In this document: piece by piece, positions 8,852-23,496 of the stretch
How positions within the stretch are numbered: the stretch's first letter is position 1
Layout: every line of letters begins with the position of its first letter
Virus record (IMG/VR): IMGVR_UViG_3300020154_000003
Coordinates: 124,001-188,000 of that record
Direction: 5' to 3' (one strand)
Length of the DNA: 64,000 bases
Position numbers and translations under genes: made by a program
The notes under the pieces: model-generated
The model's input: only the letters and a program-made list of their open reading frames with translations
What the model was told of the DNA's origin: nothing
The model's database searches: none

Positions 8852-8879
8852 TTTAGCTTTTTTCTTAGTATTTATTAGC

Positions 8880-9325: not shown

Positions 9326-10204
9326 TTACCACATTACTGGTATTAAGTTTCTCAAAAAATCTTTATCCTGAGTGAAAATAGGTGGCTCAACGACTTGCCA
9401 AGTATTTCTCTTGATATAGTACTGGCCAACCCTTTCCAAATTCGGATGTTGATCATCATCTATCAACCATTTAACATTATCTGCAGTTTTAGGATTTTTC
9501 AAAGCAAGTTTGGCACGATCTTCGGGAAGTGCAACCCATGTCTCTTGTTTAAGAATTACCCTTCCTCTTTTTTGACCTACCGGATAATCATTCCAGTTCT
9601 GACCCTTTTTCCAAATCAGGTCTTGAAGTTGATCAGTGCTCTTCCCATTCAATTCCTTGTGTGAATATAGTGATTGAGCAACGGCCTGAATGGAGTTTCT
9701 GGTTGCATCTTGCTGCCTCCAAATGAAGTAATTAATGACTTCCTCTGATGGTGGAATGGTAAATAACCTGCTGTCAAACATTGCTGTTTTAAAATTTTCA
9801 ATATCCTCTGCAATCGGTATTAAGGCAGTTTCCTTAAACCAACGAGCAAGTCGTAATTGATTGAATTTAGCGGTAGCGAGACTCGATGAAATGGATGCCA
9901 TTTTCTGAACGTTACCATCAAACCATGCTGAGGTGGTTGTCTTTTCAAAATCACTCAATAGAATCGAAATTTCATCTGACTGGACATAACCAAATTTGGC
10001 TCCTTGAATGTTATCACAGAGATATTTTGTGGTTTCATCCATATCCTTAATTAAGTCCGCATCGAATGGTCGCTTAAGTCCACGAGTATAGGTGTGAAAT
10101 GCCTTCCCATCGATCCTTATCATTGTATAGGTTCTTCTAGGAAGATAGGTTCTACTTCTATCCTCATAATAGGTTTTCATTCTGTCGCCAAGTTCATCTT
10201 TCAT
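9326..10204 (-). CDS. thg1: tRNA(His) guanylyltransferase Thg1 / Thg1-like 3'-5' polymerase
   Basis: RIDGKAFHTYT, YVQSDEIS, FDSR, YFIWRQQDATRNS. Confidence 0.93.
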   Translation of the reverse strand: MKDELGDRMKTYYEDRSRTYLPRRTYTMIRIDGKAFHTYTRGLKRPFDADLIKDMDETTKYLCDNIQGAKFGYVQSDEISILLSDFEKTTTSAWFDGNVQKMASISSSLATAKFNQLRLARWFKETALIPIAEDIENFKTAMFDSRLFTIPPSEEVINYFIWRQQDATRNSIQAVAQSLYSHKELNGKSTDQLQDLIWKKGQNWNDYPVGQKRGRVILKQETWVALPEDRAKLALKNPKTADNVKWLIDDDQHPNLERVGQYYIKRNTWQVVEPPIFTQDKDFLRNLIPVMW

Positions 10205-10503
10205 GATTCAAAATATTTTTTGTAAAAATACGAATAATTTAAATAATATCATATATTTGCCATGTGAAGCACACAAATTTCATCAAAGATAATGAAGTAC
10301 TACTTAAAGTTGACTTTATTTTTGAGCCAATCAAGGAAATTTCGGCTGTAATTAGGATTAAAGACTGTTTATATCGAGTTGAAAAATTTTGTGATGATTT
10401 CCCCGGACATCCAAATGCACATATACGACACGTCTTTCTAATAGATTGTGAACAATTTTAAAACAAAAACAAGAACTTTACGTAAAATTCATAAATCCCC
10501 ACA

Positions 10504-11379
10504 ATGACACTAATATTAGACCTCACCAAAGGAGTCACCGAAACCACAGCATACAAAGCATGGAAATTTCCGGGTGGCGAAATTCACTTCAAGTTCTCAG
10601 ATGAATTTATACGTTGGCTAAATTCTCACAGATCGCTCGAAATTCAGACCAGAATAAACACCTCAGATGATTTTCTGTTTTTACTTCTAGTAATTGATAC
10701 GTTGAAGAAGGATTATCAGAATCACACCATCGATGTTTTCATCCCTTATATGCTTTACCAGCAAGCAGATAGAGATTTCAGTGTTGGCGAATGTTTTAGT
10801 CTCAGAACTGTAACCAAAATTCTGAATGCCATTGGTGTAAATTCATACACGATTTACGATCCCCACTCAGATGTTACTCCAGCTTTACTTCAGAACTGTA
10901 AGGTTATCGACAATAGCGATTACATCAAATGGGTGCTTGAGCAACTACCTTCATTAGGTAAATATTCCAATGGATTCAACGTTGTTATGCTTTCCCCCGA
11001 TGCTGGTGCATATAAGAAAATCTATAAACTCGCCAATAAAATTCAATTCAAGGGTGAGGTTGCGTCAGCCAATAAATCTCGTTCGATTTCAACTGGAAAT
11101 ATAGACTCATTGGAACTGTCGAAACATGATTTCGAAGGTAAGGATGTGTTGATTGTTGATGACATCTGTATCGGTGGTAGAACCTTTATTGAACTAGCAA
11201 AGAAGTTGAAGGAACGGAATGTTGGTGATTTATATCTCGCAATTTCTCACGGCATTTTTAGTAACGGATATGATGAACTAAGTCTCTACTACAAAAAGGT
11301 ATTCACTACTAACAGTAGAAAAAATGAATACAATCACGAATTAATTTCAACCTTTAACATTTTTGGCGATAATGACTGA
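10504..11379 (+). CDS. ribose-phosphate pyrophosphokinase-like protein (candidate NARP1 Adps)
   Basis: FPGGEIH, PYMLYQQADR, DPHSDV, SPDAGA, IVDDICIGGRTF, HGIFS. Confidence 0.88.
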   Translation: MTLILDLTKGVTETTAYKAWKFPGGEIHFKFSDEFIRWLNSHRSLEIQTRINTSDDFLFLLLVIDTLKKDYQNHTIDVFIPYMLYQQADRDFSVGECFSLRTVTKILNAIGVNSYTIYDPHSDVTPALLQNCKVIDNSDYIKWVLEQLPSLGKYSNGFNVVMLSPDAGAYKKIYKLANKIQFKGEVASANKSRSISTGNIDSLELSKHDFEGKDVLIVDDICIGGRTFIELAKKLKERNVGDLYLAISHGIFSNGYDELSLYYKKVFTTNSRKNEYNHELISTFNIFGDND

Positions 11380-11791
11380 TAGTTCGTTAGATACATTTTT
11401 CGATATTAAAACTTGTATTGATAGACTTTACTGCGAGTGGAAGAAACATCCCAAATTAATTATCGCTGTCGATTTCGATGACACGGTTTTTGATTTCCAT
11501 AATAGAAATCAAGTTCATGATAATGTGATTAATCTCCTTCATGAATGTAAAAAAGAAGGTTTCTACATTGTCGTATTCACAGCATCCAAGCCTGAACGCT
11601 ATGACTTCATAAAGGACTACATGGAAATGAAGGGTATCGAAATTGATGGCATTAATAAAAATGTTATCGAACTTCCTTACGGCAATAACGGAAAGATATA
11701 CTACAACATTTTATTGGATGACCGTGCTGGCTTATTTCAAGCTGTTACTATTCTCACTAGCGTTTTATTTAAAATACGAAACAAAGCATGA
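11372..11791 (+). CDS. HAD-superfamily phosphatase-like protein
   Basis: IIAVDFDDTV, FTAS, K..Y..LLDDRAG. Confidence 0.75.
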   Translation: MTDSSLDTFFDIKTCIDRLYCEWKKHPKLIIAVDFDDTVFDFHNRNQVHDNVINLLHECKKEGFYIVVFTASKPERYDFIKDYMEMKGIEIDGINKNVIELPYGNNGKIYYNILLDDRAGLFQAVTILTSVLFKIRNKA

Positions 11792-12213
11792 TAGTATTTG
11801 TGGCGACTCCATTTTGGAGTTTTGATAAAGAAGTGTCTGAACGAAGAACTGCGATAATAAGCAAGTATTGCGGGCAATTATTGCGTGAGGGTATTATGTG
11901 TACTTCGCCAGTTGTTTTTGGAGTAACTATACTGAAATATACTGACCTACCGGGAAATTTTGCCTTTTGGGATAAACTTAGTTTTACCACTTTGGCAGCT
12001 TCAGATGTGCTACACGTACTTATGCTCCCCGGATGGGATGAATCGAGAGGCGTTAGTGAGGAAATAAAATTCGCACTAGAAAGAAAAATACCAATAAAAT
12101 ATTTTGATGTTTCCGAAGATAGATATGGCAGTCCCACTTTCAAAGAAAATAGCAGATCAATAGCTATTGGCAACCTAATAAGAAAAATTAATCATAAAAA
12201 AAATAACCCATGA
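11788..12213 (+). CDS. DUF1937 / nucleoside 2-deoxyribosyltransferase-like protein
   Basis: VATPF...SPV...FW...LMLPGWDESRGVSEEIKFA. Confidence 0.7.
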   Translation: MIVFVATPFWSFDKEVSERRTAIISKYCGQLLREGIMCTSPVVFGVTILKYTDLPGNFAFWDKLSFTTLAASDVLHVLMLPGWDESRGVSEEIKFALERKIPIKYFDVSEDRYGSPTFKENSRSIAIGNLIRKINHKKNNP

Positions 12214-13781
12214 AAATGAATCCATTTTTAATGGCTGACTTTTACAAGATCGGTCACCCATTTCAATACCCCAAAGGTACAAATCTTGTTTATGCTAACT
12301 TAACACCACGTAATTCCAGAATCAAGGGAGTTGACAAGATGGTGTTCTTTGGCCTTCAATATTTTATCAAGCATTACTTGATTAAGTATTTCAACGAAAA
12401 CTTCTTCGATCTTCCGAAAGACGAAGTGATGAATTCATACAGAAGAAGAATTCTCACCTCATTAGGTTCCGATCTACCTTATTATGATCACATTGCAAAT
12501 CTTCACGATTTGGGTTATCTCCCAATCGAGATTAAAGCTTTGCCAGAAGGAAGCAAGGTGAAGATGCGTGTGCCAGTACTGACTGTCAAAAATACACACC
12601 CTGAATTTTATTGGTTGACCAATTTCATAGAAACAATCATGTCCGATATTGTGTGGCAACCATGTACCTCCGCTACTATTGCCCACGAATACCGTAAACT
12701 TCTCAACAAGTTTGGTGAAGAAACTGGTATGCACCCCGACTTTATTCAATGGCAAGGTCACGACTTCAGCTTTAGAGGTATGAGTTCCTTCGAGAGTGCA
12801 TATACTTCAGCTATGGGGCACTTATTATCTTTTACTGGCACTGACACCATTCCGGGGATTGATGCTCTTGAAACGTATTACAATGCTAATGCGGATTACG
12901 AATTAATTGGTGGTAGTGTCAATGCTACCGAACACAGTGTTATGTGTGCTGGTGAAAAGGATTCAGAGTACGAGACTTACAGACGTTTGATCTGTGATGT
13001 ATACCCTAAAGGCATCGTATCAATTGTTTCAGATACTTGGGATTTATGGTTCGTACTAACTCAGATCATACCTCAATTGAAAGAAGCGATTCTCAATAGG
13101 GAAGGTAAGGTTGTTATTCGTCCTGACAGTGGCGATCCTGTTAAAATTCTTACAGGTTACTTCAAGAACGAATTGACTGTGATCGATGGCAAATATTACC
13201 GTAACACTGATGTTGATGCTCATGATATTGACGCAACTAAGCTAACGCTTAAAGCAGGTGCCAAAGAAGTTGGTGAAGCTGAAAGAAAAGGTGTTATTGA
13301 GGTTCTTTGGGACGTGTTTGGTGGAACCATCACTGACAAAGGTTACAAACTACTGGACGAACATATTGGGGCAATTTACGGTGACAGTATCACACTTACT
13401 CGTGCAGAAGAAATTTGTCAGCGATTGAAAGATAAGGGATTTGCTTCACAAGTTGTACTTGGTATCGGTAGCTACACTTATCAGTACAACACCAGAGATA
13501 CCTTTGGTACTGCAATGAAGTCTACCTATGTTGAAGTTAACGGTGAAGGAAGAGAAATTTTCAAATCTCCTGCGACTGATGATGGAACTAAAAAATCTGC
13601 CAGAGGCTTGCTGAAAGTTGTGAAAGATGAGGACGGTGAATTCGTACTTGTAGATCAGGTGTCTTGGGAAGAAGAGGCTGAGGGAGAATTAACACCAGTC
13701 TTTAAGGATGGTAAGTTACTTGTTGACCAGTCATTGAGCGAAATAAGGGCAAGATTGAGTGAAGTAGTAGAGGTAGTATAA
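12210..13781 (+). CDS. nicotinamide phosphoribosyltransferase-like protein (candidate NARP1 Namat)
   Basis: ADFYKIGH..QYP, HDFSFRG, ATEHSVM, SIVSDTWD, IRPDSGDP, IYGDSIT, K.P.TD.G.KKSARG. Confidence 0.92.
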   Translation: MKMNPFLMADFYKIGHPFQYPKGTNLVYANLTPRNSRIKGVDKMVFFGLQYFIKHYLIKYFNENFFDLPKDEVMNSYRRRILTSLGSDLPYYDHIANLHDLGYLPIEIKALPEGSKVKMRVPVLTVKNTHPEFYWLTNFIETIMSDIVWQPCTSATIAHEYRKLLNKFGEETGMHPDFIQWQGHDFSFRGMSSFESAYTSAMGHLLSFTGTDTIPGIDALETYYNANADYELIGGSVNATEHSVMCAGEKDSEYETYRRLICDVYPKGIVSIVSDTWDLWFVLTQIIPQLKEAILNREGKVVIRPDSGDPVKILTGYFKNELTVIDGKYYRNTDVDAHDIDATKLTLKAGAKEVGEAERKGVIEVLWDVFGGTITDKGYKLLDEHIGAIYGDSITLTRAEEICQRLKDKGFASQVVLGIGSYTYQYNTRDTFGTAMKSTYVEVNGEGREIFKSPATDDGTKKSARGLLKVVKDEDGEFVLVDQVSWEEEAEGELTPVFKDGKLLVDQSLSEIRARLSEVVEVV

Positions 13782-13782
13782 T

Positions 13783-14208
13783 TTGAAAGGCGAAGATAGA
13801 TTAGATTTAAATCAGTTACTGAAAGGTTACCCAAAATGTGATCTTTTGGTGACTGATTTTTTTGGAGTTGAGGATAAGAACGAAATCCATTTCAGGGATT
13901 TATATGATTTTTTTGATAAGTACGATTACCATCCCACTGTTGAACACTATTATCGTAACGAAAACGCATATTGGGTTCACAATATAATGAACCCTTCGCA
14001 CCTACCAGTAAGTAAACAAAAAGAATTTAAGTATAGGAAAGATGCTGAACTGCAGATGTTTATACTCTCATTCCATAATATGGAGGAAATATTAACTCCA
14101 TTGGAACCACATTATAGAACTGACACAACATCAAACTTTGGATTTTATAATTATGGCGATAATGACGCTAACCAAAACACTACTGACTTTACGGAATTGC
14201 CTTTCTGA
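13783..14208 (+). CDS. hypothetical protein
   Basis: ORF directly after the NAMPT-like gene. Confidence 0.55.
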   Translation: MKGEDRLDLNQLLKGYPKCDLLVTDFFGVEDKNEIHFRDLYDFFDKYDYHPTVEHYYRNENAYWVHNIMNPSHLPVSKQKEFKYRKDAELQMFILSFHNMEEILTPLEPHYRTDTTSNFGFYNYGDNDANQNTTDFTELPF

Positions 14209-14545
14209 CGATCTTCTCAAACCAAAATATAGAAATCGGTATCGACCAATTAAAAGCACTGGTCATTGCTATGTCGCCTCTGAAGCAGTATATTATTTGG
14301 TTGGAAAGAAATTAGGATATAAACCACATTACGTTAAAATTAATGGTGATACCCATTGGTTTTTAATGACAGACAATGGAGTGGACATACTCGATCCCAC
14401 GTATGATCAATTTCCCTCATTACCAAATTATAGTTCAGGAAAGCGGTGTGGATTTTTAACAAAAAAGCCATCAAAAAGATGTAAAATTTTGTTGAAAAAG
14501 ATAAAAAGTTTAAATTTGAATAATGGACAAAGTAAACGAAATTGA
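14138..14545 (+). CDS. conserved phage hypothetical protein with C/H/D residues (true start probably downstream)
   Basis: GHCYVASEA...HWFL...ILDPT..QF...GFLTKKPSKR. Confidence 0.6.
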   Translation: MDFIIMAIMTLTKTLLTLRNCLSDDLLKPKYRNRYRPIKSTGHCYVASEAVYYLVGKKLGYKPHYVKINGDTHWFLMTDNGVDILDPTYDQFPSLPNYSSGKRCGFLTKKPSKRCKILLKKIKSLNLNNGQSKRN

Positions 14546-14933
14546 ACAACCTTCCTCATTGGAGAGTTGTTTTGAATATCTGGATAAGAAATTAGTCGAT
14601 AAAGACTTATTTAAAAACTCACCAGAAAATAAAGTGCTTGGAATGTGCCACTTTTCCTTGGGAATGTGGATGAGAAATAATTGGTATCTCTGGTGGAGTG
14701 AAGATTTGGCAAAGCAATTTGCTGAGAAGGGTTACCCACAAGAAAAACCTCTTCTAGTAAAATACTTCAATGAAGAGTTAGGGATATTTCATGCTGATGA
14801 TATGAGTAGCATTATCATAACTTCGTATCATAGAAAACTTAATGACCTCACCTTACGTCTTGACCTGCAGGCTAAGAAATATCAAGATTTCTGGCAAAAT
14901 AGTGTCGATAAAAAATTGATGGATGAAGAATAA
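14523..14933 (+). CDS. DUF6794-like protein
   Basis: HFSLGMWMRNNW.LW...GIFHADDMSSII...YHRKLN. Confidence 0.55.
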   Translation: MDKVNEIEQPSSLESCFEYLDKKLVDKDLFKNSPENKVLGMCHFSLGMWMRNNWYLWWSEDLAKQFAEKGYPQEKPLLVKYFNEELGIFHADDMSSIIITSYHRKLNDLTLRLDLQAKKYQDFWQNSVDKKLMDEE

Positions 14934-15552
14934 AATATCATACATATTAATACTCTTATTAGTAATATTAACTTCCTTTAATTCAAAACCAGCAACTGGT
15001 TGTCTCGAACTCGATTTAATTCTCATCGGGGATTACTCGTCCAGTTTAAGGGGTCAAGAACATTATTTTGTAGGTGCATGTAGAACATTCGTTAAGAAAT
15101 TTCAATTATCTGAACAAACAATCAAAATTGGTATAGTAACCTTTAATGATACTGCAAAACTAATCAGTCCTTTAAGTAGTGATACTTCCTTTATCACTAG
15201 CAGAATTAATGAGTTGGCTGAAGAAATAGGTGAAGATTGGACTAATATGGAGAAAGGATTATTCGTGGCTTTTAATGAGTTCACAAATAACGGCAGACCA
15301 AATGCACAGAAAATGATTATAATCCTTTCTGACGGTGCAGTCAACGATCCGGGCGATAAAACTTCAGCACCCATAACTACGATGGAAATTATTCAACAAC
15401 TTAGAATGACTGGTATGGGTGTGTGTAGCATCTTAATTAAGAGCGGTGAAGAGGAACCAGAATTCATGAAAGCGATTTCATCAGGATGTTACGCAGAATC
15501 TAGCTACGAAAATCTAGCAATCGAATTGGCTAAATTAGATGTTTGTCTCTAA
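14923..15552 (+). CDS. exported vWA domain protein
   Basis: N-terminal signal-like hydrophobic segment; DYSSS, TNM, LSDG. Confidence 0.8.
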   Translation: MKNKISYILILLLVILTSFNSKPATGCLELDLILIGDYSSSLRGQEHYFVGACRTFVKKFQLSEQTIKIGIVTFNDTAKLISPLSSDTSFITSRINELAEEIGEDWTNMEKGLFVAFNEFTNNGRPNAQKMIIILSDGAVNDPGDKTSAPITTMEIIQQLRMTGMGVCSILIKSGEEEPEFMKAISSGCYAESSYENLAIELAKLDVCL

Positions 15553-16153
15553 AAAAAATGTGTGGAAGCCAGCTTCTCTGGATGTGATGCGTCAAATTGC
15601 AAACGCTGAGAAAGATTGGGCATCCTTACTGAAATCGGAGAACACATATAAAAAATTTTTCAAGAAATTGCTTTTTTGGCGTAAACCAAAAACACAATTC
15701 GAAGGAGTTACGTTTCCGGTAGTAAGAAAAGTCTTTGCTAATTTGATGGCTAACGATATTGTTGGAGTACAACCAATGGCAGCACCATCCAATGGTCTTT
15801 ATGCGAATTACATCACAATAACATTCAAACTTGGGAAACCAATTAAGCATAAAATTGTTGGAAAGACACCCGGAGAATATTTAATAAATTTAATACATGC
15901 TTGGAATAGTTTGCCTGATCGATTTGTGAAAGAGGACATTGTTGGTTACTATCACTATAAACTCGCGGCACTGCTTAAGGTTTATCCTACCATCCTCGAT
16001 GAGTATGAAACTGACGATTACACAAAAGATTTGATGTTTGTATTGGAAGGACAGAAGCCCAAACATAAATTTGAAGGTTACAAACCGATACCCCAAATTT
16101 TAAATGGTAATGATGGACATATACCGTTATGGCCTATTCCAAATAAAATATAG
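15539..16153 (+). CDS. protein containing a T4 gp23 major-capsid (Gol-region)-like segment
   Basis: FPVVRKVFANLMANDIVGVQPMAAPSNG. Confidence 0.65.
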   Translation: MFVSKKNVWKPASLDVMRQIANAEKDWASLLKSENTYKKFFKKLLFWRKPKTQFEGVTFPVVRKVFANLMANDIVGVQPMAAPSNGLYANYITITFKLGKPIKHKIVGKTPGEYLINLIHAWNSLPDRFVKEDIVGYYHYKLAALLKVYPTILDEYETDDYTKDLMFVLEGQKPKHKFEGYKPIPQILNGNDGHIPLWPIPNKI

Positions 16154-16157
16154 CAAA

Positions 16158-16997
16158 ATGAAGACTAACAAAAAACAAAAACATATTGCAGTATTATTTT
16201 CCTCAGGATTGGATTCAACATATCTCATCTATAAAAATCTGAAGGAAGGACATATAGTCCAACCCTATTATGTTGACATTAAAAACAATGAGAATAAGCG
16301 GATAGTGGAATTGCAAAACGTGCAGAAGTTAACTGAATTATTCATTGAGGAATTTCCAAACATGCGATTCCATAAAACGTTGACTGAAGTTTCGGTTAAT
16401 ATTGAATGGGGTTGCGATCTTTTATTCACACAAATCCCTGTGTGGTTGTTTAGTTTATCTTTCATAAGCAATCCGAATGTTCAGGAAATTCATATCGGTT
16501 ATGTTTCAAACGATGATGCAATTTCTTATATAGATGAAATAAAGAAATTTTATAAAGCACAGCAGTGGTTACATAGAGATAAACTTCCTAAACTTTGTTT
16601 CCCGCTTTTGAAAGAAACGAAATCAAGTATGATGGAGGAACTACCAGTAAAGTACAGAACCTATATTACTTCTTGTGAAAATCCAACTTTAAAACCATAT
16701 TTTATTAAAAGTGGAAGTCGAAGAATCCAGTACTTCGAACCTTGTGGTACATGTGTCGCTTGTAATAGGGTTATAAGAGAAAAATTAGATTACAATTTTC
16801 AATATAGAAAACTCATAGTAGATCACTATAAAAAATTGGAGGAAGCACAATATTTTGCACGATTTAAAGAGCATCATCCCAAAGAATATGATGGGATTTT
16901 GAAACTCATTGAAGAAACGAATAGTAATGCTTTTGAGCAGGTGTGGATAGAATCAGGTGGGGATGTTAAAGGAGGTTATGAAGCTGTAGGATGTTGA
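16158..16997 (+). CDS. QueC-like PP-loop ATPase
   Basis: AVLFSSGLDSTY, TSC, PCGTCVAC. Confidence 0.7.
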   Translation: MKTNKKQKHIAVLFSSGLDSTYLIYKNLKEGHIVQPYYVDIKNNENKRIVELQNVQKLTELFIEEFPNMRFHKTLTEVSVNIEWGCDLLFTQIPVWLFSLSFISNPNVQEIHIGYVSNDDAISYIDEIKKFYKAQQWLHRDKLPKLCFPLLKETKSSMMEELPVKYRTYITSCENPTLKPYFIKSGSRRIQYFEPCGTCVACNRVIREKLDYNFQYRKLIVDHYKKLEEAQYFARFKEHHPKEYDGILKLIEETNSNAFEQVWIESGGDVKGGYEAVGC

Positions 16998-17518
16998 TTT
17001 TAAGCACTTTATGAATTTTTCTTAGGGGTTTTCGTACCAAAGTAAAAAATGCTGGTATTTATAGAATATTACGCAATAAACTAAAGCATGGTATGAATTA
17101 TATATTAACTGTCGATAGTTCCAAAGTAGATAAGGTTATCTCTCAGCTTTCTGCGCTGAACATTGAAATAACTGATGTCGTCCGATCAAGTGGGTACATT
17201 CATGTTAATACCAAGACCTCTCAAAAATTGAATCAATTAAATGAAGTGGTTGAAATCAAAAGAGACACATTTTTCTCCCAACTTCTTTTCTAAATTAAGC
17301 ATTTTTTTAAAAACATTTTCATTCCAGTTACGTATATTTACTACGGTGGATAAAAGCAAAATAGTAAGTATTAAGCTTGAAATATTAGAACAAAATTATT
17401 GGGAACACTTTAAATTTGCGAAGGATTTGGCACAATATTTTCCAATAAGCCACCCCAAACGGCAATTACTCGATAAAGAGATGAATTCAATGCTTAAACA
17501 GATAAACGCATTAAAACA

Positions 17519-18044: not shown

Positions 18045-18066
18045 GTATTTATGAGAAATCATAGAT

Positions 18067-18378
18067 ATGAAAAAGAACAGACTCTTTGAAGTATTCGAGT
18101 ACGTTACTGGTGTTAAAATCAATGAAGACTTAACCTACGCTCACGTAGATGATGCTTCGCCTGAGCAAGATCAATCTCAGATCGGTACTGAAGTCAGTGA
18201 AGGTAGAGGAATATATAACTTTGACAACAAGCCCGGACAGTCCAAGAACAATTTCCTTCAGAACGAATGGTCGAAGAAATACAGAAGACAATTCGGTTCT
18301 TATCGAGAATATCTAGCTGCAATGGAAAGTAAGGCAGTATTGAATCCTGAAACGCAGACCTATCAGTGGTCTATGTAA
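18067..18378 (+). CDS. hypothetical protein (possible late gene)
   Basis: GTATTTAT at 18045-18052 upstream. Confidence 0.6.
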   Translation: MKKNRLFEVFEYVTGVKINEDLTYAHVDDASPEQDQSQIGTEVSEGRGIYNFDNKPGQSKNNFLQNEWSKKYRRQFGSYREYLAAMESKAVLNPETQTYQWSM

Positions 18379-22103: not shown

Positions 22104-22481
22104 ATGGAACAATATGAGGATGAATTTGAAGACGATCAAGGGGATTTTTCTGATGATGATCCTGATCAAATAGATCAAATCGACAACAGGTTGTATCTCT
22201 ATTCTGATAATTACAATACCACCGTCATATATGAGTATTATGATGAAGAGGATAATTTATTTTTAGTTAAAGACAAAAAATATGTTGGACTTATAAGTAA
22301 GAGAAATATCCAAAGCATGGTTGACTTTTCTCGTACTGAAGAATACTTCAATGAAACGGAAAAACAAATTCAAAATAATGAAAATACTTTAATTTTACAT
22401 GCCATTCATAGCTATTGCGAATATCGAAAAGATAGTGCAATCGTGTATGTACAGTATAAAGTCAGTGCAAAAAATGAGTGA
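22104..22481 (+). CDS. hypothetical protein, paralogous to 21625..22101
   Basis: Shares the motifs above. Confidence 0.6.
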   Translation: MEQYEDEFEDDQGDFSDDDPDQIDQIDNRLYLYSDNYNTTVIYEYYDEEDNLFLVKDKKYVGLISKRNIQSMVDFSRTEEYFNETEKQIQNNENTLILHAIHSYCEYRKDSAIVYVQYKVSAKNE

Positions 22482-22734
22482 GAAAGAACTTAAGGATGAA
22501 TTAGAATACTGTTATAGCACCCTTGATACTGACAAGAATGGGGAAGATGAAGATTTATCGTACATTGACTATGATATGAGACAAGCTGATCTAGTCGATG
22601 CGTATGAAGAGTGGGAAGAACATAGTAGAAATATAATTTTCCAGAACACCCTCAATAAAATGCTTAAGAAGCAAATGAAAACTGAACGAAGAAAATATTT
22701 GAAATCGATCAATCAATTTTTAAAGTCCTAAAAA

Positions 22735-22971
22735 GTGTATTGTGCAAAACCATCCATAAATCTAAAACTAACCAGCATCGTAGTTCAAGCTGAGACAAGA
22801 AAATTACGTGCAGAATGGACACCTGAAGCAGTGATGGAAATAAATAATTTTATAGACATGGACATGGGTGTTAATGTAAATGAAGTTATGGTAGATATGT
22901 TGGTTGCAAATTTAAAAGAAAAGGAAATTATAAAATATAACGAACTCCTAAATGATTGGTTGAAACTATGA
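22735..22971 (+). CDS. small protein containing a second gp23 major-capsid-like segment
   Basis: LTSIVVQAETRKLRAEWTPE. Confidence 0.55.
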   Translation: MYCAKPSINLKLTSIVVQAETRKLRAEWTPEAVMEINNFIDMDMGVNVNEVMVDMLVANLKEKEIIKYNELLNDWLKL

Positions 22972-23496
22972 AAGGCGAAAAAGTAATTAATGAAACTATA
23001 AAATATCTCAACAATAATTCCAATAGGGTGGGGGAGAAATTAACCGAATATGATTGGCGCGAATGCTGTGACCTAATTATGTGCTTGGAGGAATTGTTGA
23101 AAACAGGAGTACTAAAAAATGTTGAACTACCTAAAAATAAATTATGAAATACGAATGGAGTTTAAGGAAGTACTGGAAGTCTTGGTTCATTCAAGATGTA
23201 AAAAAAATCTGGTATAAAACAGTGCATGGTATTGAATTAGGAAACTACAAAACCATCATCCCTAGTACTGGCAATGGTAGATTTTATTCCGTGAAAAGGA
23301 AAACAGCAATCTTCGAGATTACTGAAAAGAAAACAGGTAATTTGGTTAGGATTATTCCATACAAAGAAAACCACGGGTTCATGATTGAAAATTGGATGGA
23401 TGGAAAGTTGATCAGCAGGAAATGTTTGGGTTTCGAGGAATTATGGGTTGGTGCAGAAATTCATGAAAATGCTTAGTTAATTAAGTATTTATTGGT

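What the first reader, a model, noticed from the sequence alone, without database searches (positions are those of the whole stretch)
15707..15796. Gol-peptide-like capsid fragment embedded in a non-capsid protein
Seen: VTFPVVRKVFANLMANDIVGVQPMAAPSNG inside a 204-aa ORF. From memory, the T4 gp23 Gol region is AVMGMVRRAIPNLIAFDICGVQPMNSPTG, which shares VR..NL.A.DI.GVQPM..P; I see no capsid similarity in the rest of the ORF. Established: Gol binds EF-Tu and triggers the Lit protease, and capsid proteins are common defence triggers. Inference: a decoy for capsid-sensing immunity, an EF-Tu binder, or a capsid-assembly modulator.
Basis: partly seen in the sequence, partly recalled or inferred. Interest (0 to 1): 0.7.

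Follow-up and report, generated by a model that had tools for sequence, protein, structure and literature searches.

The report
Domesticated capsid-arm fragment gene
A 366-kb soil phage has a conserved 204-residue gene whose middle ~55 residues were copied long ago from the front end of its own T4-type major capsid protein (including the 'Gol' stretch) and joined to an unrelated small helical domain; the gene is real and under selection, it is one of several capsid-piece mini-genes in this phage, and its function is untested.

Summary
Residues 57-86 of the ORF at 15539-16153 (+) match the Gol/N-arm block of T4-type capsid proteins: Pfam Gp23 scores 29.1 bits against a 24.4 cut-off, and hhalign against the phage's own capsid protein (MCP) gives 96% probability. 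Similarity covers only ORF residues ~35-90.

This is not a decayed capsid gene:
- A 76%-identical ortholog gives dN/dS 0.17.
- Full-length homologs at 33-39% identity sit in conserved synteny.
- The most complete homolog (P0006) matches MCP residues 12-111 (E 1.7e-19).

The family therefore arose from a partial duplication of the capsid gene's 5' end, fused to an orphan four-helix domain.

Other findings:
- The same genome and its relative carry further mini-genes built on other conserved MCP blocks.
- Two unrelated phage contigs carry similar pairs of capsid-piece mini-genes.
- About two dozen metagenomic small-protein clusters carry a stand-alone Gol module.
- The ORF lies in a non-late operon with NAD-salvage and QueC-like genes.

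The function is unproven. My best guess (~0.35) is a trans-acting stand-in for the nascent capsid N-terminus, aimed at a host factor. The Gol block drifts faster here than in real capsid proteins, which argues against strict Gol mimicry. The EF-Tu co-folding run gave no answer.

The parts
15539..16153 (+). The gene: 204-aa ORF, ATG start overlapping the end of the upstream VWA gene by 14 nt, TAG stop at 16151-16153. Member of a small family (alignment A3).
15638..15808 (+). Capsid-derived segment (aa ~34-90). It corresponds to the end of the MCP prodomain, here turned into a basic/aromatic amphipathic stretch, followed by the N-arm/Gol block and the first beta-strand.
   Evidence: tblastn; hhalign; linker composition
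15707..15796 (+). They align to T4 gp23 residues ~94-123, the Gol region.
15848..16135 (+). Conserved non-capsid C-terminal domain (aa 104-199). It contains the family's most conserved motif (KIxGxT...INLIxxWN). It is predicted as a small four-helix bundle with no sequence or fold relatives.
10504..16997 (+). Plus-strand gene run that contains the ORF: PRPP-synthetase-like, DUF1937, NAMPT, two unknown genes, DUF6794, VWA, the ORF, and a QueC-like PP-loop protein starting at 16158. None of the late-type GTATTTAT motifs lies ahead of it.
22735..22971 (+). Second capsid-piece mini-gene (78 aa). Almost the whole protein corresponds to MCP aa 311-372. By position this is the E-loop return strand plus the spine helix, which is my inference.
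   Evidence: Pfam Gp23 26.3 bits against cut-off 24.4; tblastn E 1.4e-5; MCP HMM E 3e-7; ortholog L006:17373-17600, dN/dS 0.19
22474..22731 (+). Paralogous mini-gene with the same C-terminal tail motif but an acidic head instead of a capsid piece. In the relative L006 an extra gene lies between the orthologs of this gene and the next (22735-22971), carrying MCP aa 402-445.
18067..18378 (+). Possible further capsid-piece mini-gene (103 aa). Residues ~17-43 resemble MCP aa 439-463, a lineage-specific region. The similarity is weak. A late-type motif lies at 18045-18052, directly upstream.
   Evidence: tblastn E 0.039; the motif is kept in L006 and L013 orthologs; not found by the MCP HMM; motif

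Best explanation
What it is (confidence about 0.9). It is a genuine gene under purifying selection, belonging to a small family found in a lineage of large uncultured T4-type phages (the window's own from soil). The family arose when the 5' end of the lineage's own major capsid gene was duplicated and fused to an unrelated helical domain of about 100 aa. The duplicated part encoded the prodomain, the N-arm with the Gol block, and the first strand. In the window's copy the prodomain has shrunk to a basic amphipathic stretch, and about 55 residues remain recognisable.

How it most likely works (inferred, confidence about 0.35). The ex-capsid arm is an unfolded docking peptide. In T4 the same part of gp23 is disordered in the prohead, binds EF-Tu, and steers fusion proteins to GroEL. 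Here the peptide is made from a non-late operon next to NAD-salvage, tRNA-repair-like and QueC-like genes. I propose that it acts in trans as a stand-in for the nascent capsid N-terminus. It would occupy a host factor that grips or recognises that N-terminus, either the EF-Tu/chaperonin route or a capsid-sensing immune protein, before the real capsid protein floods the cell. The helical domain would then supply the effect, such as blocking or sequestration.
For: Shown:
- Homology to the MCP N-terminus.
- Homolog P0006 matches own-lineage MCP aa 12-111 at 41% identity, E 1.7e-19, including lineage-specific prodomain sequence.
- Ortholog at 76% identity on six contigs from six runs; dN/dS 0.17 with dS 0.8.
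- Full-length homologs at 33-39% identity with conserved synteny: Thg1, PRPP synthetase, NAMPT, DUF6794, the ORF, a 66-aa gene, a 337-aa gene, a 672-aa gene.
- AlphaFold leaves the capsid-derived part unfolded (pLDDT about 30) and gives a helical C-domain.
- The acidic MCP linker that carries the protease site is replaced by a basic/aromatic one: 5-10 K/R in the 25 aa before the module in five of the six family members (P0006: 3), against 0-3 in MCPs.
- The motif GTATTTAT precedes the portal, large terminase, an endolysin-domain gene and the MCP operon, but not the 10.5-17.0 kb operon that holds the ORF.
- The MCP is the only non-repeat gene of this genome with dispersed partial copies.
- Similar Gol-module and other capsid-block mini-genes occur in unrelated phage contigs among small-gene arrays, one of them two genes from an Acb5 anti-CBASS gene.

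From the literature:
- The Gol peptide, or better the first ~100 aa of gp23, binds EF-Tu, and Gol is the most conserved part of gp23 (PMC3014915).
- The gp23 N-terminus targets fusion proteins to GroEL (PMC3012670).
- The region before L106 is disordered in the unexpanded head (PMC9546572).
- MCPs are sensed by Lit, CapRel and Avs7/8/10 (PMC13581612).
Against: - Within the family the Gol block is not specially conserved (33% against 39% for the C-domain). In MCPs it is much better conserved than the rest (0.79 against 0.48, 0.64 against 0.35). A mimic of a fixed target should keep the block.
- Three of the five homologs no longer score as Gp23: no hit for L013 and E 0.25 for L014 with my MCP HMM, and no precomputed Pfam hit for P0005.
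- Co-folding with E. coli EF-Tu gave no answer.
- For abortive-infection sensors, a trigger look-alike would be expected to trigger rather than block.
- No Lit-like or GroES-like gene is in the phage, and the host is unknown.
- Expression timing is inferred only from a promoter-like motif.
- The neighbouring genes are only loosely 'counter-defence'.
Confidence: 0.35

Rival explanations
1. Exapted relic. The capsid-derived stretch is only inherited raw material, now a linker or packing element, and the protein's function lies in the conserved C-terminal helical domain. The function would have nothing to do with capsids, EF-Tu or capsid sensing. The Gol-like look is simply the slowest-decaying trace of ancestry.
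For: The module drifts as fast as the rest of the protein and has decayed below detection in several homologs. The strongest invariant motifs are in the C-domain. The piece-B mini-gene also seems to have lost its capsid similarity in the distant relative L013. The detectable pieces coincide with the conservation peaks of the MCP. Old copies would stay detectable only there, so this coincidence may be a detection bias.
Against: The MCP is the only gene whose fragments are dispersed in this genome. Sets of pieces from the same MCP conservation peaks (Gol arm with spine helix, or Gol arm with C-terminal strands) recur in two unrelated phage contigs. About two dozen stand-alone Gol-module mini-protein clusters keep a near-canonical module. 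The relative L006 holds a capsid piece in a mini-gene that the window lacks: 38% identity to the MCP over 78 aa by tblastn, about 61% over the first 33 aa by my own count from that alignment. This suggests continuing gain or loss rather than one ancient accident.
Confidence: 0.3
2. Capsid- or prohead-associated accessory protein. The borrowed N-arm and strand still dock onto the capsid protein lattice, scaffold or portal, as they do in cis in the MCP. This would carry the helical domain into or onto the head as a minor head protein, internal protein or assembly or size modulator. Alternatively it could act as a dominant-negative against rival T4-type phages.
For: The only documented structural partners of this segment are neighbouring capsomers, the scaffolding core and the portal whiskers (PMC9546572). 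P0006 keeps the whole prodomain, whose known role is in assembly. The other mini-genes carry core HK97-fold elements whose only known partners are other parts of the MCP. One of them, at 18067, has the late-type motif. In L024 the pieces flank baseplate genes.
Against: The ORF lies 73 kb from the head genes, on the other strand, in an operon without the late-type motif and among metabolic genes. The (L/I)xE prohead-protease site present in the own MCP linker is absent at the homologous position (read from the sequences). There are no virion data.
Confidence: 0.2
3. Functional Gol equivalent in the strict sense: it binds EF-Tu domains II/III as T4 Gol does, and activates, traps or blocks a Lit-type protease.
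For: 13 of 29 residues are identical to T4 Gol, including the DI.GVQPM core. The ORF keeps QPM where this lineage's own MCP has QAL or QAM. Gol alone is enough in T4.
Against: See the drift argument above. The EF-Tu co-fold gave no answer. The residues critical for Gol activity could not be checked because the primary papers are not held. No Lit homolog is known for the unknown host.
Confidence: 0.1
4. Remnant of a decayed or shattered second capsid gene (for example a lost gp24-like vertex paralogue) with no function of its own, or a chance match.
For: No gp24-like second full copy is found. Several pieces lie within 25 kb on one strand.
Against: Intact ORFs are kept across lineages at 33-76% identity, with dN/dS 0.06-0.19. 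The pieces are out of order (D, A, E, C, B), each in its own gene with non-capsid sequence. Profile E-values of 1e-9 to 1e-19 exclude chance.
Confidence: 0.03

Closest known systems
Gol region of T4 gp23 (residues ~94-122), the EF-Tu-binding activator of the e14 Lit protease
   Same: The segments are homologous: the ORF aligns to gp23 90-126, with 13 of 29 Gol residues identical and the same DI.GVQPM..P core.
   Different: Here the segment sits in a 204-aa non-capsid protein expressed from a non-late operon. It is preceded by a basic rather than an acidic linker and evolves faster than in capsid proteins. EF-Tu binding and Lit activation are untested.
T4 gp24 vertex protein (full-length paralogue of gp23, same Pfam family PF07068)
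   Same: Both are products of capsid-gene duplication.
   Different: gp24 keeps the whole HK97 fold and lies next to gene 23. This ORF keeps only about 55 (ancestrally about 100) N-terminal residues, has a new C-domain and lies 73 kb away.
T4 internal head proteins and Alt, which carry a short N-terminal capsid-targeting sequence cut by the gp21 protease
   Same: The general idea is shared: a short N-terminal peptide addresses an unrelated cargo domain to a head-assembly partner.
   Different: No (L/I)xE cleavage motif lies at the position homologous to the MCP maturation site, there is no sequence relation to the known targeting sequences, and virion presence is unknown.
PHROG 12830, a 128-position family annotated 'major head protein'
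   Same: It is a short profile that ends with the same Gol block. The ORF and the metagenomic mini-proteins hit its positions ~90-126.
   Different: The matches are weak (E 0.004 for the ORF) and cover only the shared block. The members could not be inspected. A tblastn search with one mini-protein hit 2,144 cultured phage records, one place each; all 40 listed rows lie at an MCP-length place, 39 of them annotated as MCP.
Phage-encoded molecular mimics used against defence systems (for example the DNA mimic Ocr, or antitoxin mimics)
   Same: Only the proposed logic is shared: a look-alike occupies a host protein.
   Different: I found no capsid-peptide mimic described in the literature. This is an analogy, not a membership claim.

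Membership tests
T4-type major capsid protein (Pfam PF07068 Gp23, HK97 fold) | Match to the N-terminal Gol/N-arm block of the profile | tested here: met
   29.1 bits against cut-off 24.4, profile positions 3-39; hhalign 96.3%
T4-type major capsid protein (Pfam PF07068 Gp23, HK97 fold) | Full-length match covering the P-domain, A-domain, spine helix and C-terminal strands | tested here: not met
   Only 37 of 376 profile positions match. hhalign finds nothing outside ORF 35-89. The C-domain is modelled as a small helical bundle, not an HK97 fold. The Pfam cut-off is passed on the fragment alone, so automatic annotation as 'Gp23' would be misleading.
T4-type major capsid protein (Pfam PF07068 Gp23, HK97 fold) | Prodomain followed by an (L/I)xE prohead-protease site ahead of the N-arm | tested here: not met
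   The own MCP has ...INE/S... 13 aa before the block. The ORF has a basic stretch (FWRKPK) at that position, and no family member keeps the site (sequences). P0006 keeps the prodomain but not the site.
T4-type major capsid protein (Pfam PF07068 Gp23, HK97 fold) | Late expression within the head-gene module | tested here: not met
   The real MCP lies at G000 65.7-67.3 kb (-) in an operon led by GTATTTAT. The ORF lies at 139.5 kb (+) in an operon without that motif. Timing itself is inferred, not measured.
Gol peptide (Lit activator) | Sequence homology to gp23 residues 94-122 | tested here: met
   (13 of 29 identical)
Gol peptide (Lit activator) | Binds EF-Tu (domains II/III, GDP form) | tested here: inconclusive
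   Co-folding with EFTU1_ECOLI scored 0.00, and the tool's verdict was 'no answer, not evidence for or against'. The host EF-Tu is unknown.
Gol peptide (Lit activator) | Enables Lit cleavage of EF-Tu at Gly59-Ile60, with conservation of the 13 residues found critical by scanning mutagenesis | not testable with these tools
   The primary papers are not held. The PF10463 (Lit) search of the phage was negative, but the E. coli control did not register a hit either, so that search is weak.
Head internal proteins with a capsid-targeting sequence | N-terminal targeting peptide removed at an (L/I)xE site, and presence in virions | tested here: not met
   No conserved site at the homologous position. 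Virion presence cannot be tested here.
Split or trans-assembled second capsid protein (inteins or pieces that reassemble) | Intein block motifs (N-terminal Cys/Ser, C-terminal HN plus Cys/Ser/Thr) flanking the capsid piece, pieces collinear and complete | tested here: not met
   The ORF contains no Cys at all and no HN+C/S/T junction. The pieces are out of order, and piece C is absent from the window's genome.

The most novel reading that the evidence does not exclude
Large T4-type phages make a class of small trans-acting 'capsid-epitope' proteins. Each presents one conserved block of the major capsid protein: the Gol arm, the spine helix with its strand, an A-domain helix-strand, or the C-terminal strands. 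They would use these to blunt capsid-sensing immunity (Lit/EF-Tu, CapRel, Avs7/8/10-type sensors) or to poison capsid assembly of rival T4-type phages. The window's ORF would be the Gol-arm member, fused to an effector domain.
Probability: 0.2. Interest if true: 0.85.

Novelty: new variant of a known kind. Interest (0 to 1): 0.6.

Why it matters
Capsid proteins are now known to be among the most commonly sensed phage molecules. The Gol block is the classic example, and it is also the most conserved part of T4-type capsid proteins for reasons that are still debated (EF-Tu binding, chaperonin delivery, or lattice contacts).

A selected gene that carries this block outside any capsid context, together with sister mini-genes carrying other conserved capsid blocks, gives a natural separation-of-function experiment. 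Whatever these small proteins bind is a candidate for what constrains those blocks. If they prove to be antagonists of capsid sensing or of rival assembly, that would be a new class of counter-defence or interference proteins.

Practically, the ORF passes Pfam's Gp23 threshold on a 37-residue match, so annotation pipelines will mislabel such genes as major capsid proteins.

Tried and rejected
1. Chance match. Rejected by profile statistics.
2. Decaying pseudogene. Rejected by dN/dS and by conservation of the full-length ORF.
3. Read-through or alternative genetic code joining pieces.
   - The TAA between 22399-22731 and 22735-22971 is a gene boundary: the relative has separate overlapping genes.
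   - Making TAG, TGA or TAA a sense codon raises the summed length of long ORFs by only 9% for TAG; the larger gains for TGA and TAA were not checked against known genes. Code 11 already yields 258 ORFs of at least 150 aa covering 71% of the genome.
   - Reading through the ORF's TAG stop adds only 4 codons.
4. Split inteins or trans-assembly. No intein motifs, and the pieces are out of order.
5. Homing-endonuclease or intron flanks carrying exon pieces. No HNH, GIY-YIG or LAGLIDADG hits among the neighbours scanned.
6. C-domain derived from the MCP. hhalign finds nothing.
7. Function of the C-domain from structure or features.
   - AF2 of the whole protein gave pLDDT 44.8.
   - The domain alone gave pLDDT 60.8 with a four-helix core at 71-82.
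   - Foldseek against PDB and AFDB clusters gave no match better than E 2.7.
   - The ESM Atlas returned only weak leads.
   - PADLOC and NCBIfam gave nothing.
8. EF-Tu co-folding. No answer.
9. More family members. None in IMG/VR, JGI metagenome contigs or GTDB genomes beyond the phage's own contig.
10. Prevalence of mini-proteins in IMG/VR. The 80 best module matches were all real MCPs (76 full-length, 4 cut by contig ends), so the stand-alone forms are a small minority.
11. RNA evidence for timing. Only soil DNA-type runs hold the sequence, so I did not lay reads.
12. T4 late promoter TATAAATA. Not enriched; a different motif was found instead.
13. Piece-B family search. The word-index search found only self.

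Full report
**Setting.** The window is bases 124,001-188,000 of a 366,038-bp IMG/VR virus record (36% GC, CheckV 100% complete) assembled from a soil metagenome. It is a T4-type phage. It has one full-length Gp23-family capsid gene at G000 65,673-67,340 (-), 556 aa. Portal and large terminase genes lie nearby. The closest capsid proteins in cultured or deposited phages are only 32-40% identical: an uncultured 484-kb phage and Flavobacterium phage immuto. The standard genetic code fits the genome.

**The observation.** The 30 residues are present as described, inside a 204-aa ORF at 15539-16153.
- Pfam Gp23 matches ORF aa 53-89 to the first 37 positions of its 376-position profile, above the curated cut-off.
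- PHROG 138 'major head protein' agrees.
- The phage's own capsid protein matches at 41% identity over MCP 44-104.
- A profile of the ORF's family aligns to MCP 44-106 with 96% probability and to nothing else.
- Against solved T4 gp23 chains, the ORF aligns to residues 90-126, which contain Gol, and 13 of the 29 Gol residues are identical.

The homologous stretch is about 55 residues, and the C-terminal 110 residues have no capsid similarity.

**It is a gene, not debris.**
- A 209-aa ortholog (P0002, 76% identity) occurs on six contigs from six sequencing runs with the same gene order.
- Nei-Gojobori dN/dS against it is 0.17 at dS 0.8. This is within the range of the neighbouring genes, 0.03-0.17.
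- An exhaustive HMMER search of 1.84 billion representatives found four more full-length homologs of 199-291 aa at 33-39% identity.
- Three of them could be placed on contigs. All three show the same neighbourhood: Thg1, PRPP-synthetase-like, NAMPT, DUF6794, the ORF, a 66-67-aa gene, a ~337-aa gene on the other strand and a ~672-aa gene.

The family is rare. Scans of IMG/VR, JGI metagenome contigs and GTDB genomes added nothing beyond the phage's own contig.

**Origin.** The longest homolog, P0006, matches the window phage's capsid protein over residues 12-111 at 41% identity (E 1.7e-19). The match includes prodomain sequence that is specific to this capsid lineage. The family therefore began as a copy of the first ~110 codons of the lineage's own capsid gene, encoding the prodomain, the N-arm/Gol block and the first strand. 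This copy was joined to a different C-terminal domain.

In the window's ORF and most relatives, the acidic prodomain end that carries the protease site has become a basic, aromatic amphipathic stretch.

The C-domain holds the family's strongest invariant motifs. It models as a small four-helix bundle with core pLDDT 71-82. It has no detectable relatives by sequence, language-model features or fold.

**More capsid pieces.** tblastn with the own capsid protein, an HMM of six diverse T4-type capsid proteins, and Pfam all find further short genes carrying other capsid blocks.
- Piece B (MCP 311-372) is at window 22735-22971. It passes the Pfam cut-off, and its ortholog gives dN/dS 0.19.
- Piece C (MCP 402-445) is present only in the relative L006, at 17137-17376.
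- Piece D (MCP 490-543) is at G000 121,859-122,149, just upstream of the window inside a tRNA cluster.
- A weak piece E (MCP 439-463) is at 18067-18378.

All lie on the plus strand and are out of capsid order. Each sits in its own small ORF together with non-capsid sequence.

Pieces A-D coincide with the four conservation peaks of T4-type capsid proteins. Part of that coincidence may be detection bias. An all-against-genome tblastn with every ORF of at least 200 aa showed that, apart from tail-fibre repeats and ordinary paralogue families, the capsid gene is the only one with dispersed partial copies.

Pieces B and C belong to a tandem family of mini-genes that share a C-terminal tail motif and differ in their heads. 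The relative has a capsid-piece gene that the window lacks, so gain or loss is recent.

**Beyond this lineage.** About two dozen of the 51 significant hits in the exhaustive search are short proteins of 68-211 aa. They have unrelated N-termini, often a basic or aromatic linker, a near-canonical Gol module, and a stop soon after. PHROG profiles match only the module.

Five of these were checked. All are internal genes of contigs up to 293 kb, lying among arrays of small genes.

Two unrelated contigs carry pairs of pieces:
- L023 has a Gol-module gene plus a circularly permuted spine-helix/strand gene.
- L024 has a Gol-module gene plus a C-terminal-strand gene.

Such genes are nevertheless a small minority. 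The 80 best module matches in IMG/VR were all true capsid genes. A tblastn search with one mini-protein hit 2,144 cultured phage records, one place each. All 40 listed rows lie at an MCP-length place, 39 of them annotated as MCP.

**Expression class (inferred).** The motif GTATTTAT, usually followed by an A-run, occurs 87 times against about 43 expected.
- It lies within 67 nt upstream of an ATG-led ORF in 56 cases.
- It precedes the portal, the large terminase, an endolysin-domain gene and the operon that contains the capsid gene.
- In the first 26 kb of the window it occurs on the plus strand only at 8868, 17055, 18045 and 23485.
- None precedes the 10.5-17.0 kb gene run that holds the ORF.
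- That run starts after a divergent intergenic region and is separated from the upstream motif at 8868 by a strong hairpin terminator.

I therefore infer that the ORF is not in the late class with the capsid protein. Its operon partners are a PRPP-synthetase-like protein, DUF1937, NAMPT, DUF6794, a VWA protein and a QueC-like PP-loop protein.

**What the segment is known to do in T4 (literature).**
- The 29-residue Gol peptide, and more stably the first ~100 residues of gp23, binds EF-Tu and lets the Lit protease cut it. Gol is the most conserved part of gp23 (PMC3014915).
- The gp23 N-terminus targets fusion proteins to GroEL (PMC3012670).
- Residues before L106 are disordered in the unexpanded head and are thought to contact the scaffolding core. 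They later form the N-arm, which makes inter-capsomer and portal contacts (PMC9546572).
- Capsid proteins are direct triggers of CapRel and of Avs7, Avs8 and Avs10. Avs7 even recruits EF-Tu (PMC13581612).
- I found no report of capsid-fragment proteins or capsid-peptide decoys.

**Weighing the mechanisms.** That the ORF is a neo-functionalised partial duplicate of the capsid gene is well supported. What it does is not.

Points in favour of a trans-acting mimic of the nascent capsid N-terminus directed at a host factor:
- the non-late operon;
- the loss of the protease site and its replacement by a basic linker;
- the unfolded nature of the arm;
- the recurrence of capsid-block mini-genes in early-type small-gene arrays;
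- the known EF-Tu and GroEL affinity of this very region.

Points against strict mimicry:
- In the family the Gol block is no better conserved than the rest (33% against 39%).
- In real capsid proteins it is clearly the best-conserved N-terminal part (for example 79% against 48%).
- Several homologs no longer score as Gp23.

This pattern fits either a partner that co-evolves or a segment that has become mere scaffold. The EF-Tu co-fold was uninformative. I therefore give the host-side mimic 0.35, an exapted relic with unrelated function 0.30, a capsid or prohead accessory or interference protein 0.20, strict Gol/Lit function 0.10, and debris or chance about 0.03.

One detail may matter for the Gol question. 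The ORF keeps the ancestral ...GVQPM... core. This lineage's own capsid proteins read ...SVQAL... or ...SVQAM....

**Verdict.** The functional readings remain hypotheses. The finding is a previously undescribed use of capsid-gene fragments, and it can be tested with ordinary binding, Lit and plating assays.

Noticed in passing
window 22474-22731 and 22735-22971; L006:16892-17600; L013:7568-8711; L012:14963-15232: A tandem family of 56-85-aa mini-genes (2 to 6 copies per phage, one seen in the held part of L012). They share a C-terminal tail, roughly Y-[ND]-x-x-[VLI]-x-x-[FW]-[LI]-K at the very end, which looks like a PIP-box or clamp-binding motif. Their heads differ: acidic, capsid piece C, capsid piece B, or other. 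The function of the tail is unknown.
   Followed up: partly
window 8868-8875, 17055-17062, 18045-18052, 23485-23492 (+); genome-wide in G000: The promoter-like motif GTATTTAT followed by an A-run occurs 87 times against ~43 expected, typically 11-25 nt before the ATG. It precedes the portal, large terminase, an endolysin-domain gene and the MCP operon, so it is a probable late promoter. It reads as the reverse complement of the T4 late box (TATAAATA) on the coding strand. TATAAATA itself is not enriched.
   Followed up: partly
L029:874-3614 (G000 120,873-123,613, just upstream of the window): A cluster of 7 tRNA genes. It includes one with anticodon CTA, an amber-suppressor type that ARAGORN calls 'Pyl'. 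TAG is the rarest stop (20 of 258 long ORFs), and making TAG a sense codon raises the summed length of long ORFs by only 9% (258 to 295 ORFs of at least 150 aa). The 204-aa ORF ends in TAG, with a TAA five codons later. The capsid piece D mini-gene (L029:1859-2149) lies inside this tRNA cluster.
   Followed up: partly
window 9326-13781: A Thg1-like tRNA-His guanylyltransferase gene (minus strand, 96 bits), a PRPP-synthetase-like gene, DUF1937 and NAMPT are conserved together in all relatives. From memory, this resembles phage NAD+ reconstitution and tRNA-repair modules. No NMN adenylyltransferase was looked for.
   Followed up: no
window 14923-15552: A 209-aa VWA-domain protein with an N-terminal hydrophobic, lipoprotein-like signal (...ATGC). 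It overlaps the start of the ORF by 14 nt. It is present only in the window phage and its close relative, and is not found in the more distant members seen (absent at that position in L012 and L014; not visible in L013, whose contig ends there), so it is not a conserved partner.
   Followed up: partly
window 16104-16997: The QueC-like PP-loop gene most likely starts at the ATG at 16158 (MKTNKKQK...), 5 nt after the ORF's stop, rather than at 16104. The matches to QueC are weak (E about 1e-5).
   Followed up: partly
proteins P0008, P0021, P0038; P0028, P0010, P0015, P0030: In several stand-alone Gol-module mini-proteins the module is bracketed on both sides by a short repeated peptide. In one group this is FKFGR or KFKYGR. 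In another it is ENVY.R.V..EKYKKY. This suggests a clamp or hairpin that presents the module as a loop.
   Followed up: no
L023:7035-8756: On an unrelated T4-type contig, a mini-gene with a circularly permuted capsid piece B (spine helix first, then the strand) lies ~700 nt upstream of a Gol-module mini-gene (P0043). A PF18894 'PhageMetallopep' gene follows directly. Lit is also a zinc metalloprotease, so this pairing may be worth examining. G000 has no such gene.
   Followed up: partly
L016:6034-7061: A Gol-module mini-gene (P0013) on a 237-kb contig lies two genes upstream of a gene with the Pfam Acb5 (anti-CBASS) domain.
   Followed up: no
G000 65,673-67,340 (own MCP) and proteins P0053-P0055: The capsid proteins of this lineage read SVQAL or SVQAM where almost all T4-type capsid proteins, and the 204-aa ORF, have VQPM in the Gol core.
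   Followed up: no
window 17093-17293: A 66-aa gene led by the late-type motif. It is 91% identical in the relative. A 66-67-aa gene sits at the same position in every homologous locus (directly after the ORF or after the QueC-like gene), but homology of those was not tested. No family match.
   Followed up: no
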